The notes under the pieces: model-generated
The model's database searches: none
Seen by the model: the letters and a program-made list of their open reading frames with translations, nothing else
Told to the model about the DNA's origin: nothing
Program-made: the position numbers and the translations under genes
Assembly (NCBI GenBank): GCA_002269645.1
Contig: NIVC01001183.1
Span: 62,001 to 126,000, forward strand
Direction of reading: 5' to 3'
DNA length: 64,000 bases
Source: Macrostomum lignano
Taxonomy: Eukaryota
Shown: in pieces, positions 26,800 to 34,068 of the stretch
Layout of the letters: each line of letters opens with the position of its first letter
Numbering within the stretch: position 1 is the first letter of the stretch

Positions 26800-27255
26800 C
26801 CCAAAATACCCCATGAAGGGTAACCGCAAATTCCTCACAATGGCCTATGAAGAATCTCAGAAAACTCCCCAAAAAACCATGAAGAGTAAAAGCAAATTCT
26901 CCAAAATGCCCCATGAAGGATCTCAGAAACTTCCCCAAAATACCCCATGAAGGATCTCAGAAACTTCCTCAAAATACCCCATGAAGGATCTCAGAAGTTT
27001 CCCTAAAATACCCCATGAATGATCTCAGAAACTTCCCCAAAATACCCCATGAAGGATCTCAGAAAATTCCTCAAAATACCACATGAAGAATTTCAGCAAA
27101 TTCCAAAAAATACCCCATGAATGATCTCAGTAAATTTCACAAAATACCCCATGAAGGATCTCAGCAAAATTCCCCAAAATACCCCGTGAAGGATCTCAGC
27201 AAATTCACTAAAATACCCCATGAAGGATCTCAGCAAATTCCAGAAAGTTCCCCAC
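26800..27255. repeat. 34-bp degenerate minisatellite (CCCATGAAGGATCTCAGAAACTTCCCCAAAATAC)
   Basis: Period 34 at 26911, 26945 and 26979. Confidence 0.92.
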
Positions 27256-28131
27256 GAAGGATGTCACCCTACTCTAACTGCCTCATTTTCAAAAGACAAA
27301 GTTCCAACAAGCAAAAGACCCTAACAGGGCTACAAGTACACATAACTAAAGTTCCACAGCCCGAGAAAAAGGATCAGCCTGAAGTCGGCAGACCGATCGC
27401 AGTTCGGATCAGTCATTTGCTTTATAGCTCTGCTCTGCCCCCATTCTAGAGTGATGCTCGGGATCTCCAACCCGCCCCCCAGCTTGCCCTTATAATTGAA
27501 CACGATGGAGCAGGCACTCTGGCTCAATCAATGACCCGCAGCAGCTGCCCTCCGTTCTCATCCTCCTTGGTGCATCTGAAATATCAGCAGCAACAATTTG
27601 ATCAGAATGCGTTTGTATTTCTTTGCCCAGCAGAATTTGTGCTAATTATTGGATACAATTATTGGAACAAGTTTACAAAGCAGCTTAGTAATAGAGAAAC
27701 TGAAGCCAGTTTCAGGCAGAGAATATAATTAGTATTTTACAGCAGGACATTAAAGAAAGTTTAAATAATAGTGGCTTTATTTACTCTGCCAAAATGGGGA
27801 AGTAAGTCTTATAACATTGCAAAAGAAATGCAATTTCTGCTACTAGCAGATGCACACAGAAAAACTGAGTACCCCCGGTTTCGAACAACTTCAGGGCGCG
27901 GTGTGGCTTAAAAAATTTAGAGGGGGGGGGGAAACGACAAGGGAGCAAAACTCGGGGGGGTCCAACAACACGCTAACAAGCGCGGCTTTTGATGGGAGGA
28001 GGAAGTATCCCCTAGGGGGGCGGTGGGCAAAAGGGAAGCCGAGCCGAGTGGAATCGAACTGCCGTTTCGCTCGCAAATTGGACCAAAAGTTCCCGCAGAT
28101 GTTCGACTCTCGCTTCCGCCATGCAAACGGG

Positions 28132-28340
28132 TGTCCACCCGCTCTTAGACAGGTCATGCTAACCCGTTTTTAGACAGGTCATGTCATGTCCACCCGCTCT
28201 TAGACAGGTCATGTCATGTCCACCCGCTCTTAGACAGGTCATGTCATGTCCACCCGCTCTTAGACAGGTCATGTCATGTCCACCCGCTCTTAGACAGGTC
28301 ATGTTGAGTCCACCCGCTCTTAGACAGGTCAAGTTGAGTC
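28132..28340. repeat. 30-bp minisatellite (TAGACAGGTCATGTCATGTCCACCCGCTCT)
   Basis: About 7 copies, ~34 bp after the LRR gene stop. Confidence 0.95.
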
Positions 28341-28373
28341 CACCTGCTCTTAGACAGGTCGCGCTGGCGACTG

Positions 28374-30977
28374 TCAGACGTCCGTTTCCACGCCACCAAC
28401 AGCTCCGCTTCCGCAGTCGCCACCGATGCAGGTGTACTTTGCGCACGGCGGAATAGCGATCAGACTGCCGCCACCTGTCGATGGTAGCGGGGGCAGCGGC
28501 GGCGCCGTTGTTAACCTGGGCGGCGGCAGCGGAGGCGGCGGCGGCTGCTGCAGAGACTGAAGACTGCGCCGTTGATGCTGCTGCTGCTGCTGGCATCGCC
28601 TGCGTCTCCGCTTTCGATGCCGTCGGCTATCGCAGGAGGCCAGCGATCGCTGCCGCTGCTCCTGGTGCAGCTGCGTTGTCTCCTGCATGCTGATTCCGCC
28701 GCTGCCGCCATCGTTGGCACCGCAAGACGCGTCGCTGCTGTCGATGTCGTCGCTGCTGCAGCTGCCGCTGTGCGAAGTCTTCATAGCCGAGCGGCTGTTC
28801 CGAGCAAACCGATCGAAGTCCACGTAGCGCGGAATGTCGTAGGGCGACCCGGCGGAGGGCACCAGGTCCGGCGGGATGCCTACTCGGAGGGGAGGCGGCA
28901 CGAAGTCTGGCCGGTGCTGCAGCAGCCGCTGCAGAGTCTGGTCCCGGCACTGCTGGCATTTGGCGCCGCCGGCCGATGAGGCGCACAGGACGCCGACTAG
29001 AGGCGACGCGGCCGAGGCGGCTGTTGAAGAAGCCGCGATGTCGGCAGCCGCCTGTGCAGCGGCCGACGATTCCAGCGCTCGGTGCCGACCGGCCACGACG
29101 GCTGCTGGTGGACGCTGGCGCCGACGCCTTCTAGCCAGGTTGGTGAGCACGACAACCAGAGTGATGAGGAACAGAACTGCCACCAGGGCTCCGGACACGA
29201 TGCCGACTCCGATCACAACAGACTGGTTGACCACGTGGCGCTCGCGGTACACCACTGAGGTGGAGTTGTACCTGGCCGGGCAGTACCTGTGTCGGTACTC
29301 CAGCAAAGAGCGCATCCGCTCGCCAGTCTCGCTGTCGCACTGCACGTCCCGATAGTTGGCCAGCGCGGCGCGGACCTGGCTCCACTTAGCCGGCTGAAAC
29401 AGGCCGCAGGAGCACACGAAGCCCTGGCCGGTGAACAGCAGGCGTGGCCGGCTGCGCTGAGCAGTGAGGTTGAGCAGCGAGTCTGGCAGGTCCCGCATGG
29501 GATTGCCGGTGATGTTCAGCCAGCGCAGAGCGGTGAAGCGAGCCAGGGGGGAGAAATCTGTGTCAGCTGTCAAAGCGTTGTAGCTCAGATCCAGGCCTTG
29601 CACGAGCGGCGCCAAGGACGCGGCCTCGTCGCTGACTTCGCTGAGGTCGGCGATCGAGTTTCTTGTCAGCCGCAACTCGTACAGGCTGCCGTGCACGCTG
29701 ACCGGCAGCAGCTGCGGCAACTTGGTGAGGCCGGCGCCTTCGCAGTCGACTGTGAGTCCGGGAGGTCGCACGGTCTCCAGACAGGAGCAGCCAATCGGAC
29801 AAGCGGCCGCGTGCCGGCAGACCAAGTCGGTCTCATTCAGGCTCAGGACGGTTCGCCAGGCGGGCTGCCCGAAGCAGGGCAGGCTGGTCCAGTAGTCCAG
29901 GGACAGCGCGTTTCTCTTGGAGAACTCCCGCGGGTCGGAGTACACCGCGCGGAGGAAGCGCCACGCGTGCTGTAGCCGGCAGTCGCAGGCCACAGTGCTG
30001 CCAGAGTTGTCAATGTCCACAAACGACTGGAAGGCGTCGCGAAATCGCTTCAGCTGGTTGACAACTGCGTCAGCCTGTCGCTTGGCCGGGCCAATGTCGG
30101 GCATGGGGAGGCCCCAGAGCCGGTTGGGGCCGAAGGCTTCAGGCCCGAACTGGTTGTGTAGCAGCAGCACGGACAGGCGCACATAGTAGCTCGCGTCCTC
30201 CAGCCGCCTTCTGTCGCGTTGGCGCTCAATGGCTCGGACATCGGAGGTCGTCCACACCCAGTTGAGCCGGTTGGTGACCTCGGCCAGGCGGTTGCCACTC
30301 AGGTTCACATCTTGCAGGCTGACCAGCCGCACCAGCGACATGTCCACCCGCTTCAGGCCGCTGCTGGCGACGTTCAGCTTCTTCAAACGGAACTGGCGCT
30401 CCGGCATGAGCCGGCTGATGAAGAGCCACTCCAGGCCAACATTTTCGGACACGTCCAGCTGCTCCAGGCTGGGGAATCGTTCCAGGTAGTTGGCCAGGTC
30501 AAGCTGATTGAGCTTGTTAGCGCGCAGGCTTAGCCAACGCAGCTGACTCAGCTGGCAGGAGTCCGCAGTCCGCGGCTCGGAGGTCGCGCCGTCAGCGATG
30601 CTGTTGTCAGACAGGTCCAGCTCTGTCAGGCTGGGAAACAGCCGACAGAGGTCGGTCAGCGGCAGGGCAGTCAGGCCAGCTCGGGTCAGGCTGAAGCGGC
30701 CCACCTGGGCTGGCGAAGACAGACCGGCTGGCAGGTCGCAGCTGCTGGCTGATGTCACCGATTTTGGCGGTGTCGGCGAAGGCGGCAGCCAGCAGCGATG
30801 CACTGACACAGCCGCGAAGCGGGCGGAGGAGGCGCCGACGGCAGGCAATCTAGGCTGAGCATCGGAGACAACCACATCCTGACAGTGACGCCAGGCGCAG
30901 CTGGAAGCGTCTAGACATTCAACAATTCCGCTACCGATGGCATGCAGCAGCAACTGCAGCAACAGAAACCGCCGCAT
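28374..30977 (-). CDS. Intronless LRR type I membrane receptor, 867 aa, Toll-like (multi-cysteine-cluster) ectodomain without TIR
   Basis: Signal peptide; LRRs (LTELDLSDNSI, LRWLSLRANKL, LEQLDVSEN, LQDVNLSGNRL); internal LRRCT (ACDC...LPC...LVC) directly followed by LRRNT (CPIGCSC...VDC); three more LRRs; FVCSC LRRCT; TM segment VVIGVGIVSGALVAVLFLITLVVVL; low-complexity tail. Confidence 0.9.
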   Translation of the reverse strand: MRRFLLLQLLLHAIGSGIVECLDASSCAWRHCQDVVVSDAQPRLPAVGASSARFAAVSVHRCWLPPSPTPPKSVTSASSCDLPAGLSSPAQVGRFSLTRAGLTALPLTDLCRLFPSLTELDLSDNSIADGATSEPRTADSCQLSQLRWLSLRANKLNQLDLANYLERFPSLEQLDVSENVGLEWLFISRLMPERQFRLKKLNVASSGLKRVDMSLVRLVSLQDVNLSGNRLAEVTNRLNWVWTTSDVRAIERQRDRRRLEDASYYVRLSVLLLHNQFGPEAFGPNRLWGLPMPDIGPAKRQADAVVNQLKRFRDAFQSFVDIDNSGSTVACDCRLQHAWRFLRAVYSDPREFSKRNALSLDYWTSLPCFGQPAWRTVLSLNETDLVCRHAAACPIGCSCLETVRPPGLTVDCEGAGLTKLPQLLPVSVHGSLYELRLTRNSIADLSEVSDEAASLAPLVQGLDLSYNALTADTDFSPLARFTALRWLNITGNPMRDLPDSLLNLTAQRSRPRLLFTGQGFVCSCGLFQPAKWSQVRAALANYRDVQCDSETGERMRSLLEYRHRYCPARYNSTSVVYRERHVVNQSVVIGVGIVSGALVAVLFLITLVVVLTNLARRRRRQRPPAAVVAGRHRALESSAAAQAAADIAASSTAASAASPLVGVLCASSAGGAKCQQCRDQTLQRLLQHRPDFVPPPLRVGIPPDLVPSAGSPYDIPRYVDFDRFARNSRSAMKTSHSGSCSSDDIDSSDASCGANDGGSGGISMQETTQLHQEQRQRSLASCDSRRHRKRRRRRCQQQQQHQRRSLQSLQQPPPPPLPPPRLTTAPPLPPLPSTGGGSLIAIPPCAKYTCIGGDCGSGAVGGVETDV

Positions 30978-32084
30978 CTTCTGCAGCTCAGCGTGGGCAA
31001 CTGCCCTCCAACTCTGCCCTCTAGAGGGAGGTCGGATAGACTTACTAAAAAGGGAAGGCTTGAAAAAACCGAGTCAGGAAAACAAAAGAGCCGGCCAGGG
31101 AATCGGCGCCGGAAGAGAAATTGAAAGCGGCGGTGAAAAAAGGGGAATTACGAAGAGCTTTCTCCTCGTTCAATCCTTTGCCTTTTTAGGCAGGCGAGCT
31201 GGTCTAAAAATTTCTTTTCTACAACTGCTCGGCGTGTGTTTCCTTCTTGCTTTTGCGATTTCGTATACCAGAGGCCCCCTCCCTCTCCCTCTCGCTCCAG
31301 CTCTGGTTGGCTGGTTCCCGCTGTCTCTGGGAGACGCAATAGGCTCCTGAGAAGAGACAGACAGAACAGACCTACAGCTTATCTTGCAGGCAATGCTTGC
31401 TAGCTGGCCTTCCTTCATATAAATAGAGAGTACTGCGCACCTCTGGCGCCTCAGCCGCCTGAGCATACACCAGTTAGAAAAGGCTCGAATTTGGCCCAAG
31501 AGCGAGGCACATATATTGTCTAAAATAGCTGGGCCATAAAATCATGGGGGGGTCGGTTCTGAGCACAGATAGGAATGTCATTGTGCTGTTCTGTACACTC
31601 TGAAAGATTGAATTTGCATTTGTACTAGCATAGTAGAGTCGAATTAACCGCCCCCCTGCGAGCTATCAGAGATCTGTCAATCAATTTAATTCAAACTTTG
31701 ACCCTGACCACAGAATTTGTATTGCAAATTAGGACTTAATAAGAATGTTAAAGGCAGCCGGTTGTCATGTCTTATTGACTATCGGGTCCCGGGCAGACAC
31801 CTCAGCAACAGGCCCCTCTCTATCTGCACTTTAATTCAAGCCCAACGCGGATTCGATCTGCTCGTCACTCCAAGGCCAGGATGGCTGAGCAGCAGTCTCC
31901 AAGTCGCACAAGTGGCATGGGAAGGCAAGGACTTTACAAAAAAAATATATATAAGCTGACACAGACAAAAGTGCTGCCACTTCGGTACTCCTATCAATGC
32001 GATCTGTTAGCGTCCTGGCCGGCAAATTACCATCCAGCAGCTGTACAAAAGCATATGTAGCTCGCCAATGTTATGTGAGACAGA

Positions 32085-32582
32085 GAGAGAGGGGGGGTGA
32101 GAAAGAGAGAGGGGAGGGAGGGAGAGAGAGAGAGGCGGAGGGAGAGAGAGAGGGGAGGGAGAGAGGGGAGAGGGGAGAGAGGGGGAGGGAGAGAGGGGAG
32201 AGGGAGAGAGAGGGGGAGGGAGAGAGGGGAGAGGGAGAGAGAGGGGAGGGAGAGAGAGGGGGAGGGAGAGAGGGGAGAGGGAGGGAGAGAGAGGGGGAGG
32301 GAGAGAGAGGGGGAGGGAGAGAGGGGAGAGGGAGGGAGAGAGAGGGGGAGGGAGAGAGAGGGGAGGGAGAGAGAGGGGGAGGGAGAGAGAGGGGGAGGGA
32401 GAGAGGGAGAGGGAGAGAGAGGGGGGAGAGAGAGGGGGAGGGAGAGAGGGGAGAGGGAGGGAGAGAGAGGGGGAGGGAGAGAGAGGGGGAGGGAGAGAGG
32501 GGAGAGGGAGATAGAGGGGGAGGGAGATAGAGGGGAAGGGAGAGATGGGAGAGGGAGAGAGGGGGAGAGAGAGGGGGGAGAG
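32085..32582. repeat. GA-rich low-complexity array
   Basis: GGGAGAGAGAGGGGA iterations. Confidence 0.95.
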
Positions 32583-32929
32583 GTAAAGAACCGAAAAAAC
32601 CACACGAGTCAAACAGCAAGCCGGCACTCGGCAAATTATTGACAGCCACACCCCGAACAGTATTTCTGAAGTGTTGGCAACCAACTTGCTCCATTAGGGA
32701 TGGTAATAAAAAACTTTTGTAGTACATTTTGTTATCTATTCACCGACAAAAAACTCGACCCACATTCCCAAATGGGAGGGTTCTAAAAGCATTAGCGAAT
32801 GCCAGACGCACGCATCTGTTGAAAATACGAGTCGCCGTTACGAGAAGCAGTCAAAAATACAATAAACCTGATTGATACCTTCCTTCAGAAGACGCTCCAA
32901 TATAGTCAATTAAATTCCTCATAAAGCCT

Positions 32930-33325
32930 CAATTACATTTCTCATGAAGCCTCAGATGCCTTCTTCATGAAAACCTCAGTTACATTCCTCATGAAGCTTC
33001 AAGCACATTCCTCATGAAGCCTCAAATACATTCCTCGTGAAGCCTTGAGTACATTCCTCATGAAGCCTCAATTACATTCCTCATGATGTCTCACTTACAT
33101 TTCTTCATGAAGCCTCAATTACATTCCTCACAAAGTCACAATTACATTCCTCATGAAGCCTCAATTACATTCCTTTTGAAGCCTCAATTATATTCCTCAT
33201 GATGTCTCACTTACATTTCTCATAAAGCCTCAATTACATTTCTCATGAAGCCTCAATTACATTCCTCATAAAGCCTCAAATGCCTTCCCCATGAAGCCGC
33301 AATTACATTCCTCATGAAGCCTCAC
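32930..33325. repeat. 23-bp degenerate minisatellite (ATTACATTCCTCATGAAGCCTCA)
   Basis: About 17 copies. Confidence 0.92.
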
Positions 33326-33774
33326 AAAATGGGAATTACATTTCGAAGATAATCGTGCAACCCAAGCGCGATGAAAGGAACAATTCTGTAAAAAGGAACC
33401 GTGGATAATTTCACGAATTCCAAAACTGAAATTCGCTTCCGCACCGAGGCTCGGGAGTCGAATATCGAATCAGTTTAATCGCCAGCCAGAACCCCCTCGA
33501 GCAAGCTTCAGCCAGCTAATTGAGCTGATAGAGACCCAATCAATTAATTTCCGCAGACAAGGCACCACCGGTGCTAAATTAATGTTCAATTTTGAGCAGT
33601 TGGAAGGGGTCACAACTATTATTTTTACTAGGAATATCGAAAAAAATGCGTTTTAGATTCCATTGCTATGTCATTTGCTATCCTCTGAATAAAATAGTCT
33701 TAATTCTGTTATTTTAGAGATACTCATGTTACAGAATCATTCTAAAAGACAGTGTCACATTTATGAGTGCTCAG

Positions 33775-34068
33775 TGACACATTACACTGGATTGTAACAC
33801 ATTGCACTGGTTTGTAACACATTCCACTGGTTTGTAACACATTACACTGGTTTGTAACACATTACACTGGTTTGTAACACATTCCACTGGTTTGTAACAC
33901 ATTACACTGGTTTGTAACACATTACACTGGTTTGTAACACATTACACTGGTTTGTAACACATTAAACTGGTTTGTAGCACATTACACTGGATTTTAACAC
34001 ATTACACTGGTTTGTAGCACATTACACTGGTTTTTAGCAGATTACACTGGACTGTGACACATTACACT
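33775..34068. repeat. 20-bp minisatellite (ACACATTACACTGGTTTGTA)
   Basis: About 14 copies. Confidence 0.95.

What the first reader, a model, noticed from the sequence alone, without database searches (positions are those of the whole stretch)
28374..30977. Toll-type ectodomain with the TIR domain replaced by a Tyr/Pro-rich adaptor-docking tail
Seen: LRRs-LRRCT-LRRNT-LRRs-LRRCT-TM, followed by ~250 cytoplasmic residues with no TIR. The tail has SPYDIPRYVDF, a basic run and PPPPPLPPPRLTTAPPLPPLP; no TIR-like exon is evident downstream. Established: the internal LRRCT-LRRNT pair defines multi-cysteine-cluster (Drosophila Toll-type) receptors; YDxP is a Crk/Nck SH2-type motif; Hydra uses separate LRR and TIR proteins. 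I recall that flatworms are reported to lack canonical TLRs, which needs verifying. Inference: a Toll-derived receptor rewired to tyrosine-kinase/SH2-SH3 signalling, or one half of a split Toll system.
Basis: partly seen in the sequence, partly recalled or inferred. Interest (0 to 1): 0.7.

Follow-up and report, generated by a model that had tools for sequence, protein, structure and literature searches.

The report
Flatworm Toll-type receptor without TIR
This Macrostomum lignano gene encodes a membrane receptor with an insect-Toll-type outer part, but its inner signalling (TIR) domain is replaced by a floppy tail with conserved docking motifs, so flatworms said to have lost Toll receptors kept the outer half for another use.

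Summary
Window 28374..30977 (-) is an intact single-exon ORF of 867 aa from Macrostomum lignano. It reads signal peptide, Cys-rich N-cap, about 8 LRRs, LRRCT, LRRNT, about 4 LRRs, LRRCT, TM (587-614) and a 253-aa tail.

No TIR is present in the protein, in its three relatives, or in any frame of the 64-kb window.

An exhaustive profile search of 1.84 billion proteins found only four family clusters: three M. lignano paralogues and one protein of unknown origin. The next proteins matching the LRRCT-LRRNT-LRR-LRRCT module are almost all TIR-bearing multi-cysteine-cluster Toll receptors (22 of 24). Slit scores about half as well. Solved Toll, Toll5A and TOL-1 ectodomains are the top structural matches.

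The Toll-type ectodomain is therefore supported. By definition, though, the protein is a TLR-like LRR-only protein, not a TLR.

The YDxP motif is not conserved.

Most likely this is a recognition or adhesion receptor tethered to PDZ/SH3 scaffolds. The ligand, the partners and a possible separate TIR partner remain untested.

I rate it a new variant of a known kind, of moderate interest.

The parts
28374..30977 (-). Complete single-exon coding sequence (867 codons plus stop) of the TIR-less Toll-type receptor.
   Evidence: The ORF is listed. The identical protein P0001 occurs on two M. lignano contigs. Its three relatives are also single-exon.
30918..30977 (-). Signal peptide, residues 1-20 (MRRFLLLQLLLHAIGSGIVE).
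   Evidence: Hydrophobic N-terminus with Kyte-Doolittle score 1.85. The segment has low pLDDT and is helical in the model. The cleavage site is inferred.
30702..30917 (-). Cys-rich N-terminal cap, residues 21-92. C27, C32, C62 and C80 are conserved in the three paralogues.
   Evidence: Invariant columns in A1/A2. The model shows a beta-hairpin at 32-39 and 55-62.
30078..30701 (-). N-terminal LRR block, residues 93-300. It has about 8 repeats, with two long helical insertions (244-260 and 301-319) before the cap.
   Evidence: LRR_4 and LRR_8 hits. LxxLxLxxN motifs at residues 117, 146, 198 and 221. LRR strands in the model. Matches LRRC4B, LRRC32 and TLR9 LRRs.
29814..30017 (-). First LRRCT cap, residues 321-388 (C331-D-C333 ... 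C368 ... C387).
   Evidence: The cysteines are invariant or at least 90% conserved with 35 TLRs. The segment aligns to Drosophila Toll 4lxr residues 526 onward.
29694..29804 (-). Internal LRRNT cap, residues 392-428 (C393-P-x-x-C397-x-C399 ... C412).
   Evidence: Pfam LRRNT at 392-425, weak (E 0.021). All four cysteines are invariant with TLRs. The model shows a beta-hairpin at 398-411.
29442..29693 (-). Membrane-proximal LRR block, residues 429-512, about 4 repeats.
   Evidence: LRR_8 at 431-493 (2.8e-12). Motifs at residues 432, 459 and 484.
29277..29441 (-). Second LRRCT cap, residues 513-567 (C522-x-C524 ... C547 ... C566).
   Evidence: The cysteines are conserved with TLRs. The segment aligns to Toll5A 7b1b up to chain residue 742.
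29136..29219 (-). Single transmembrane helix, residues 587-614, followed by the stop-transfer run RRRRRQR (616-622).
   Evidence: Kyte-Doolittle score up to 3.04. Helix 585-619 in the model.
28377..29135 (-). Cytoplasmic tail, residues 615-867. It is low-complexity (rich in A, S, R, P, Q and G), has no predicted secondary structure and no TIR.
   Evidence: Composition. The full-length model is all coil with pLDDT below 50 in this region (weak evidence because the alignment was shallow). The TIR HMM scores E>0.6.
28815..28847 (-). Tyrosine motif SPYDIPRYVDF, residues 711-721. Y-D...R-Y is shared by the three M. lignano paralogues only.
   Evidence: The paralogues read SPYDSMTALPRY and PTYDVANPSMRY.
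28725..28754 (-). Acidic serine cluster SDDIDSSDAS, residues 742-751. It is conserved in all four members as S-x-D-[FIL]-x-x-x-[DE]. It may be a casein-kinase-type phosphorylation site or a sorting signal; that function is inferred.
   Evidence: Tail alignment.
28515..28535 (-). Core of the polyproline tract, PPLPPPR, residues 815-821. It lies within PPPPPLPPPRLTTAPPLPPLP (812-832). This is a class II SH3-ligand-type PxxPxR, conserved in all four members as PPP[LP]PPR (PPPLPPPR in this copy).
   Evidence: None of 146 other LRR/TLR hits has PPPxPPR in its last 250 aa.
28377..28388 (-). C-terminal ETDV-COOH, residues 864-867. This is a class I PDZ-ligand motif and is conserved in the family: TDV, TDV, TNV and TDL.
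   Evidence: Baseline among 146 other hits: 9 end in [ST]x[VLI] and none in T[DN][VL]. PSD-95 recognises C-terminal S/T-X-V of Kv1 channels; the paper was retrieved by searching ETDV (PMC2222984).
28132..28360 (.). 30-bp minisatellite of 7.8 copies, beginning 14 bp after the stop codon. It presumably lies in the 3' UTR or just downstream.
   Evidence: Tandem Repeats Finder.

Best explanation
The gene encodes a type I membrane protein of the Toll receptor lineage that lacks the TIR domain. It belongs to a small family: three paralogues in M. lignano and one relative in an unidentified organism.

**Shown**
- Its ectodomain has the multi-cysteine-cluster Toll layout, with a much shortened N-terminal LRR arc (about 8 repeats).
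- Its membrane-proximal LRRNT-LRR-LRRCT module has the same cap layout as in Toll, with about 4 repeats against 5 in C. elegans TOL-1.
- Its closest non-family relatives, by sequence and by predicted fold, are TIR-bearing Toll receptors.
- The cytoplasmic part is a low-complexity tail of about 250 residues. The only features conserved family-wide are short linear motifs.

**Inferred**
- The protein cannot signal through MyD88-type TIR-TIR contacts.
- It more likely acts as a cell-surface recognition or adhesion receptor.
- Its C-terminus (ETDV, a class I PDZ ligand) would tether it to a Dlg/MAGUK-type PDZ scaffold at junctions or synapses.
- Its PPPxPPR site would recruit an SH3 adaptor.
- Tyrosine phosphorylation of the Y-D motif is an optional extra input in the M. 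lignano copies.
- This resembles the TIR-independent modes already described for Drosophila 'long' Tolls. In those, tail tyrosines outside the TIR bind Src and PI3K, and the ectodomain alone is sufficient for myosin polarity.
- It also resembles vertebrate synaptic LRR adhesion proteins that end in PDZ ligands.
- One candidate extracellular partner is latrophilin. C. elegans TOL-1 binds the LAT-1 lectin domain through the N-cap of exactly this membrane-proximal module.
For: **Toll-type ectodomain**
- In the exhaustive HMM search, the first non-family proteins with one alignment across the LRRCT/LRRNT junction are Toll receptors. 22 of 24 hits above 40 bits carry a TIR, as do 30 of the 33 best module scores.
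- Near full-length collinear alignments exist to P0056, P0118, P0085 and P0098.
- Named hits are Cacopsylla Toll, Limulus toll-like, and Owenia and Patella TIR proteins.
- Slit proteins, confirmed by EGF and LamG domains, match only LRRNT plus LRRs, at 31-38 bits against 50-79 bits for TLRs.
- In the PDB only Toll5A (1.7e-13) and Drosophila Toll (1.1e-9) span the module.
- The top 7 Foldseek hits are Toll, Toll5A and TOL-1.

**No TIR**
-.
- All four genes end at a conserved T-x-[VL]-stop. The paralogue P0002 is followed after 1.9 kb by a convergent FERM/RING gene.

**Tail motifs**
- Conserved in 4 of 4 family members, against 0 of 146 other hits.

**Literature**
- M. lignano has 0 TLRs, and TLR-like proteins are present (PMC8609888).
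- Toll-2 tail tyrosines outside the TIR recruit Src42 and PI3K, and the ectodomains are sufficient for Myo-II polarity (PMC11034934).
- TOL-1 binds LAT-1 through its C-terminal LRR domain (10.1101/2023.05.04.539414).
- PSD-95 recognises C-terminal S/T-X-V sequences of Kv1 channels (PMC2222984).
Against: - No binding, expression or localisation data exist. PDZ and SH3 docking are inferred from 4-7-residue motifs.
- The good structural model was built from an alignment made mostly of TLRs, so the Toll-first Foldseek ranking is partly circular. TM-scores are low (0.22-0.31).
- LRR similarity can be convergent.
- The neighbour-joining tree puts the family inside TLRs with only 30% support. Descent from a TIR-bearing Toll is therefore not proven.
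- The N-terminal LRR block matches generic LRR proteins (LRRC32, LRRC4B, TLR9) equally well.
- Transcript support for the single-exon model was not checked.
Confidence: 0.55

Rival explanations
1. It is the LRR half of a split Toll system, as in Hydra. The ectodomain senses a ligand and signals by pairing in the membrane with a separate TM-TIR protein. The long tail would be accessory.
For: Flatworms lack canonical TLRs but retain TIR-domain proteins. Planarians also retain MyD88, SARM, TRAF6 and TAK1 (PMC7958881). PMC8609888 suggests TLR-like LRR-only plus TIR-only proteins could substitute, as in Hydra. The ectodomain is Toll-type.
Against: The 20 TIR proteins reported for Schmidtea mediterranea have no LRR or Ig domains, and no TM-TIR partner is described in what I read. 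A tail of 180-253 aa with motifs conserved across 28-45%-identical relatives suggests the tail itself is the output. No TIR-coding sequence lies near any of the four genes. This reading is not mutually exclusive with the best explanation.
Confidence: 0.15
2. This is the first reader's main reading: a receptor rewired to phosphotyrosine signalling. Phosphorylated YDxP would dock a Crk/Nck-type SH2 adaptor, and the proline tract would dock that adaptor's SH3 domain.
For: Y713-D is conserved in the three M. lignano paralogues, with a second R-Y 5-9 residues later. Drosophila Toll-2 and Toll-6 are phosphorylated by Src on tail tyrosines outside the TIR (PMC11034934). PPPxPPR is conserved.
Against: The +3 proline that defines the Crk/Nck-type motif occurs only in this copy; the paralogues read YDSM and YDVA. 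The fourth family member has no aligned Y-D. This tail contains only three tyrosines. The PDZ ligand and the PxxPxR site are the features conserved family-wide.
Confidence: 0.15
3. It is not of Toll origin. It would be a lineage-specific LRR adhesion protein, in the manner of Slitrk or Slit fragments, whose double-cap layout and cap cysteines resemble Toll only because all LRRNT and LRRCT caps are alike.
For: Caps are shared by many LRR families. LGR5, LRIG1, TPBG, Slit2 and VLRs also hit the LRRNT-LRR part. Tree placement within TLRs is unsupported. A PDZ-ligand tail is typical of synaptic LRR adhesion proteins (my own knowledge).
Against: Among 1.84 billion representatives, the proteins that align across the LRRCT-LRRNT junction are almost exclusively TIR-bearing. 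Alignments with several TLRs are collinear from the first LRR block to the TM. Slit scores about half as well, and no Slitrk-, LRIG- or Tartan/Capricious-type protein is apparent among the module hits I characterised. I did not annotate the rest of the top 150, mostly giant multi-LRR proteins.
Confidence: 0.12
4. It is a decaying remnant or retrocopy of a lost TLR gene with no function.
For: The gene is single-exon. It lies in satellite- and retrotransposon-rich DNA.
Against: ORFs of 779-867 codons are intact in four diverged genes. All cap cysteines and LRR asparagines are conserved. The C-terminal motifs are conserved right up to the stop codon.
Confidence: 0.03

Closest known systems
Multi-cysteine-cluster (P-type) Toll receptors: Drosophila Toll, Aedes Toll5A, C. 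elegans TOL-1 and spiralian mccTLRs
   Same: The ectodomain order is the same: LRRs, LRRCT, LRRNT, LRRs, LRRCT, TM. The cap cysteines are conserved. These are the best sequence and fold matches.
   Different: There is no TIR domain. The N-terminal LRR arc is much shorter: about 8 repeats, against 23 in TOL-1 (10.1101/2023.05.04.539414). The tail is disordered and carries PDZ- and SH3-type motifs.
Drosophila 'long' Tolls (Toll-2, -6, -8) acting in planar polarity
   Same: They provide a precedent for TIR-independent output. Tail tyrosines outside the TIR recruit Src and PI3K, and the ectodomains are sufficient for myosin polarity. Toll-8 works with the latrophilin Cirl (PMC11034934).
   Different: Those proteins still carry a TIR, and their tails follow it. 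I did not test any tail homology. A few TLR hits do have post-TIR tails ending in PDZ-like motifs (P0118 QTNI, P0068 QSDV), which is a lead only.
Hydra HyLRR / HyTRR split Toll system
   Same: An LRR-only transmembrane protein in an animal without a canonical TLR (PMC8609888).
   Different: A TM-TIR partner is not shown here. The conserved long tail argues for an output of its own.
RP105/CD180, a vertebrate TIR-less TLR4 relative (my own knowledge)
   Same: A Toll-family ectodomain and TM without a TIR. CD180 appears among weak PDB hits.
   Different: CD180 has a single-cysteine-cluster ectodomain, a tail of only about 11 residues, and works with MD-1 as a TLR4 modulator.
Synaptic LRR adhesion proteins ending in PDZ ligands: NGL/LRRC4, SALM/LRFN, LRRTM and Slitrk (my own knowledge for the tails)
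   Same: They are type I LRR proteins whose C-terminal PDZ ligand binds PSD-95/Dlg scaffolds. LRRC4B, LRRC4, LRRTM2 and LRFN1 LRRs are among the PDB hits.
   Different: Apart from Slitrk they have a single LRR cluster, often with Ig or FN3 domains. None aligns across the LRRCT-LRRNT junction. The resemblance is functional, not membership.

Membership tests
Toll-like receptor (definition used in PMC8609888: at least one LRR, a TM and a TIR) | Extracellular LRR domain | tested here: met
   LRR_8 at 2.8e-12 and LRR_4 at 1.3e-10. LRR solenoid in the model.
Toll-like receptor (definition used in PMC8609888: at least one LRR, a TM and a TIR) | Single transmembrane helix | tested here: met
   Residues 587-614, with Kyte-Doolittle score up to 3.04. 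Helix in the model.
Toll-like receptor (definition used in PMC8609888: at least one LRR, a TM and a TIR) | Cytoplasmic TIR domain | tested here: not met
   Pfam finds no TIR even at E up to 1. The TIR HMM scores E>0.6 against the tails. The best six-frame hit in the window and paralogue loci is E=1.7. The protein is therefore a 'TLR-like, LRR-only' protein, not a TLR.
Multi-cysteine-cluster (mcc / P-type) Toll ectodomain | More than one LRRCT, with an internal LRRNT | tested here: met
   LRRCT1 spans 321-388, LRRNT2 392-428 and LRRCT2 513-567. Their cysteines are invariant or at least 90% conserved with 35 TLRs. The segment aligns to Drosophila Toll across the junction.
Multi-cysteine-cluster (mcc / P-type) Toll ectodomain | Closest relatives outside its own family are Toll receptors | tested here: met
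   22 of 24 junction-spanning hits carry a TIR. The top 7 Foldseek PDB hits are Toll, Toll5A and TOL-1, with the caveat that the alignment behind the model was TLR-rich.
Multi-cysteine-cluster (mcc / P-type) Toll ectodomain | Phylogenetic nesting within mccTLRs, which would imply secondary TIR loss | tested here: inconclusive
   In the neighbour-joining tree of the module, the family is monophyletic (86%). It sits inside TLRs relative to Slit, but that node has only 30% support.
Slit | Four LRR domains followed by EGF and laminin-G domains; a secreted protein | tested here: not met
   The protein has no EGF or LamG domain. True Slits (P0146, P0073, P0036) match only LRRNT plus LRRs, at 31-38 bits.
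Slitrk | Two capped LRR domains, a TM, and a tail with a Trk-like C-terminal tyrosine | tested here: inconclusive
   The two-domain layout is shared. No Slitrk-like protein turned up among the module hits I characterised, but no Slitrk sequence was compared directly. The C-terminus here is a PDZ ligand, not a Trk-like tyrosine motif.
Class I PDZ-ligand-bearing receptors | Free C-terminus [ST]-x-hydrophobic | tested here: met
   The four members end in ETDV, TTDV, GTNV and QTDL. Baseline is 9 of 146 for the loose motif and 0 of 146 for T[DN][VL].
Class I PDZ-ligand-bearing receptors | Actual binding to a PDZ domain | not testable with these tools
   This needs a pull-down, yeast two-hybrid or peptide-array assay with M. 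lignano Dlg or other PDZ proteins.
Hydra-type split Toll system (LRR-only plus TM-TIR) | A TM-TIR partner encoded in the same genome and interacting with the LRR protein | not testable with these tools
   No tool here searches the M. lignano proteome or genome. None is encoded within the window or the paralogue flanks.

The most novel reading that the evidence does not exclude
The reported 'loss of Toll-like receptors' in Platyhelminthes was, at least in macrostomids, an excision of the TIR domain rather than loss of the gene. The retained Toll ectodomain would survive as a PDZ- and SH3-scaffolded cell-cell recognition receptor. It might be a latrophilin ligand acting through its membrane-proximal LRR module, as in C. 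elegans TOL-1 and Drosophila Toll-8. That would show the developmental and adhesive function of Toll is separable from its TIR/MyD88 immune function and can outlive it.
Probability: 0.25. Interest if true: 0.75.

Novelty: new variant of a known kind. Interest (0 to 1): 0.55.

Why it matters
- Flatworms are the textbook case of bilaterians without TLRs. How they sense microbes, and what became of the Toll gene lineage, are open questions.
- A conserved, intact, TIR-less protein with a Toll-type ectodomain gives that question a concrete handle. M. lignano is a tractable model for this; to my knowledge (not checked here) RNAi, in situ hybridisation and transgenesis are all established.
- If the protein acts in adhesion or polarity through PDZ/SH3 scaffolds or latrophilin, it would support the view that morphogenetic recognition is an ancient, TIR-independent function of Toll receptors.
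- If it instead pairs with a TIR-only protein, it would be a second, independent example of the Hydra-type split receptor.
- Either way it refines the statement 'TLRs are absent from Platyhelminthes'.

Tried and rejected
- **AlphaFold2 on the full protein with the three-paralogue alignment.** Mean pLDDT was 41, so the model was unusable for fold search. I replaced it with an ectodomain model built from a 39-sequence alignment.
- **Word-indexed homologue searches with P0001 and P0006.** They found nothing beyond the M. lignano paralogues and generic LRR proteins. Only the exhaustive profile search was informative.
- **Passing raw six-frame translations to Pfam.** I replaced it with a locally built TIR HMM run against all open segments.
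- **Identifying the organism behind P0006 (Logan run DRR639838).** No paper cites the run and the cluster has no other member. The taxon remains unknown.
- **Using the second genomic copy to gauge selection.** The CDS and 2 kb on each side are identical, so this was uninformative.
- **Neighbour-joining tree of the module.** It gave no supported placement within TLRs.
- **Pfam on ten other large ORFs of the window.** Apart from a retrotransposon gag zinc knuckle and low-complexity artefacts, it found nothing relevant.
- **Pseudogene or retrocopy.** Considered and rejected, because the ORFs are intact and the motifs conserved.
- **Slit fragment.** Considered and rejected: the protein has no EGF or LamG domain, has a TM, and matches Slit with lower scores.
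- **A cryptic TIR in the tail.** Considered and rejected: the TIR HMM scores E>0.6.


Full report
**1. What is there**

Window 28374..30977 on the minus strand is one uninterrupted ORF of 867 codons starting at an ATG. The exact protein is encoded on two contigs of the Macrostomum lignano assembly GCA_002269645.1. The window is a 100% match to one of them, NIVC01001183.1. The second copy has an identical CDS and identical 2-kb flanks, and is about 98.3% identical further out.

Coding GC is 65% and GC3 is 78%, in an otherwise AT-richer, repeat-laden region.

**2. Anatomy**

- Residues 1-20 are a hydrophobic signal peptide.
- Residues 21-92 are a Cys-rich N-cap. C27, C32, C62 and C80 are invariant among the paralogues.
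- Residues 93-300 hold about 8 LRRs. LxxLxLxxN cores lie at residues 117, 146, 198 and 221, and Pfam reports LRR_4 and LRR_8.
- The caps follow: LRRCT1 at 321-388, LRRNT2 at 392-428, about 4 LRRs at 429-512, and LRRCT2 at 513-567.
- The TM helix is at 587-614, followed by RRRRRQR.
- The tail is 253 residues.

I aligned the family with 35 Toll-like receptors. Every cap cysteine is invariant or at least 90% conserved: C331, C333, C368, C387, C393, C397, C399, C412, C522, C524, C547 and C566.

With that alignment, AlphaFold2 gives a confident ectodomain model (mean pLDDT 83.8, pTM 0.77). It has the expected strands and caps, plus two long helical insertions (244-260 and 301-319) in the first block. 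A model of the full protein from the three-paralogue alignment was poor (pLDDT 41). It predicted no secondary structure at all in the tail.

**3. No TIR**

- Pfam reports only LRR families, even at E up to 1.
- I built a TIR HMM from seven Pfam-confirmed TIR regions of hits and iterated it to 56 TIR-bearing proteins.
- It does not hit any family member. Against the isolated tails the best E is 0.69.
- I then ran it against all six-frame open segments of at least 25 aa. That search covered the 64-kb window and the loci of the three relatives, with up to 10 kb of flank on each side. The best E is 1.7.
- Downstream of the stop codon, on the gene's strand, lie a 30-bp minisatellite, further minisatellites, a 2.5-kb (GATA)n tract, and then an LTR-retrotransposon gag/pol on the other strand.
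- All four family genes are single-exon and stop right after a conserved T-x-[VL].
- The paralogue P0002 is followed 1.9 kb downstream by a convergent FERM_N/RING gene.
- A TIR supplied by alternative splicing is therefore very unlikely. Transcripts were not examined.

**4. Relatives**

The word-indexed search of 5.8 billion proteins found only two M. lignano paralogues: P0002 (807 aa) and P0003 (814 aa), each about 44% identical over 62-66% of the query.

An exhaustive HMMER search of 1.84 billion cluster representatives, using the ectodomain+TM profile, found one further member. This is P0006 (779 aa, E=2.3e-67), aligned in a single stretch over profile positions 28-613. It comes from a 4.9-kb contig assembled from sequencing run DRR639838. 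The organism is unknown and GC3 is 59%, so it is not M. lignano. No other member exists in these collections.

**5. Is the ectodomain Toll-type?**

After the family, the hit list is a mixture. One part is giant multi-LRR proteins, whose scores are sums over many repeats. The other part is proteins of 700-1100 aa that match the LRRCT-LRRNT-LRR-LRRCT module in a single stretch.

I re-scored all hits locally:

- 24 non-family proteins have one alignment across the LRRCT1/LRRNT2 junction at more than 40 bits, and 22 of them carry a TIR.
- One exception is a horseshoe-crab 'toll-like' protein; the other looks like a truncated gene model.
- By module score alone, 30 of the best 33 carry a TIR.
- Several alignments are collinear from the first LRR block to the membrane: P0056, P0118, P0085 and P0098.
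- P0026 and P0085 lack a Pfam TIR call, but they have recognisable divergent TIRs after the TM.
- Named hits are Cacopsylla Toll, Limulus toll-like, and annelid (Owenia) and mollusc (Patella) TIR proteins.
- Bona fide Slits (EGF plus LamG) match only LRRNT plus LRRs, at 31-38 bits against 50-79 bits for TLRs.

Among solved structures, only Aedes Toll5A (profile positions 370-544, E=1.7e-13) and Drosophila Toll (310-521, E=1.1e-9) cover the module. LGR5, LRIG1, TPBG and Slit2 cover only the LRRNT-LRR part.

Foldseek against the PDB ranks Drosophila Toll, Toll5A and C. elegans TOL-1 in the first seven places. There are two caveats: the model's alignment was mostly TLRs, and the TM-scores are low (0.22-0.31).

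A bootstrapped neighbour-joining tree of the module makes the family, including P0006, monophyletic (86%). It places the family among TLRs relative to Slit, but without support (30%).

My conclusion is that the ectodomain is Toll-type. Whether the family lost a TIR or never had one is not resolved. By the working definition of a TLR (LRR, TM and TIR; PMC8609888), it is a 'TLR-like, LRR-only' protein.

**6. The tail**

The four tails (180-253 aa) are barely alignable, yet they share five features:

- A basic juxtamembrane patch.
- An acidic serine cluster: SDDIDSSD, SDDFSSED, SSDFSSGD and SLDLLRSE.
- PPP[LP]PPR, a PxxPxR class II SH3-ligand-type site.
- A C-terminal class I PDZ-ligand motif: ETDV, TTDV, GTNV and QTDL.
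- The Y-D...R-Y motif, which is shared only by the three M. lignano paralogues. The +3 proline that would make it Crk/Nck-type exists only in this copy.

For a baseline, I looked at the 146 other proteins from the search. Nine end in [ST]-x-[VLI], none ends in T-[DN]-[VL], and none has PPPxPPR in its last 250 residues.

PSD-95 recognises the C-terminal S/T-X-V sequences of Kv1 K+ channels (PMC2222984). The paper came up when I searched for ETDV. That this motif is the Kv1.4 C-terminus is my own recollection.

A few TLR hits have post-TIR extensions ending in PDZ-like motifs (P0118 QTNI, P0068 QSDV). I record this as a lead only.

**7. How it most likely works**

Shown: this is a Toll-type ectodomain on a single-pass protein without a TIR, with conserved short linear motifs in a low-complexity tail.

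Inferred: output is not through MyD88-type TIR contacts. It more likely runs through tethering to PDZ scaffolds (Dlg/MAGUK type) and SH3 adaptors, with possible tyrosine phosphorylation in the M. lignano copies.

Precedents for TIR-independent Toll function exist:

- Drosophila Toll-2 tail tyrosines outside the TIR recruit Src42 and PI3K.
- Toll-2, -6 and -8 ectodomains suffice to polarise myosin.
- Toll-8 works with the latrophilin Cirl (PMC11034934).
- C. elegans TOL-1 binds the LAT-1 lectin domain through the N-cap of its C-terminal LRR domain (10.1101/2023.05.04.539414).

That C-terminal module is the part of this protein that matches Toll receptors most specifically, which makes latrophilin a candidate partner. 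This is inference only.

**8. Context and novelty**

The literature states that M. lignano and other flatworms have no TLRs. It also states that TLR-like LRR-only or TIR-only proteins are present in the TLR-lacking groups, with the data not shown (PMC8609888). Planarians retain TIR proteins, MyD88 and downstream kinases (PMC7958881).

TIR-less Toll relatives are known elsewhere: RP105/CD180 and Hydra HyLRR. The kind is therefore known.

What is new here is a conserved flatworm family that pairs an mcc-Toll-type ectodomain with a long tail bearing PDZ and SH3 motifs. I rate it a new variant of a known kind, with moderate interest (0.55).

The split-receptor rival could not be tested, because no tool here searches the M. 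lignano proteome for TM-TIR proteins.

Noticed in passing
window 28132-28360: A 30-bp minisatellite (7.8 copies, 90% matches) starts 14 bp after the stop codon of the gene. It also creates spurious overlapping ORFs with 'MTCLRAGGHD'-type repeats.
   Followed up: partly
window 19148-27266 and 32077-34000: The gene is flanked by many tandem arrays: 22-bp (19148-19881), (GATA)n of about 2.5 kb (20293-22824), (AGAC)n (22086-22908), 23-bp (23250-24118), 22-bp (24835-26330), 34-bp (26780-27266), a GA-rich tract (32077-32580), 23-bp (32906-33324) and 20-bp (33777-34000+).
   Followed up: no
window 14391-18499 (+): An LTR-retrotransposon coding region. It has a gag-like ORF with a CCHC zinc knuckle (14391-15251). 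It also has a 1131-aa pol ORF (15104-18499), annotated with aspartic protease, RT, RNase H and integrase domains.
   Followed up: partly
L002 (NIVC01001758.1:57628-80231): A second copy of the whole locus exists in the assembly. Its CDS and 2 kb on each side are identical, and it is about 98.3% identical further out. It may be an allelic or homeologous duplicate of this polyploid-like genome.
   Followed up: partly
L005:572-2911 (Logan DRR639838 contig): This is the only family member outside M. lignano (P0006, 779 aa). It is also single-exon on its contig, lacks a TIR, and ends in QTDL with a PPPPPPR site. The source organism is unknown.
   Followed up: partly
P0051 / P0178 (Tachypleus and Limulus 'toll-like', 855-879 aa): These horseshoe-crab Toll-like proteins have a strong match to the module, but neither Pfam nor my HMM detects a TIR. 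They may be another TIR-less Toll lineage or a truncated gene model.
   Followed up: no
P0118, P0068, P0065 (TIR-bearing mccTLR hits): Some canonical mccTLRs have disordered post-TIR extensions ending in class I PDZ-like motifs (QTNI, QSDV, VTHL). A PDZ-ligand C-terminus may therefore predate TIR loss.
   Followed up: no
L003:14341-17639 (-): The paralogue P0002 is followed by a convergent gene with FERM_N and RING (zf-C3HC4_3) domains, resembling a MYLIP/IDOL-type E3 ligase.
   Followed up: no
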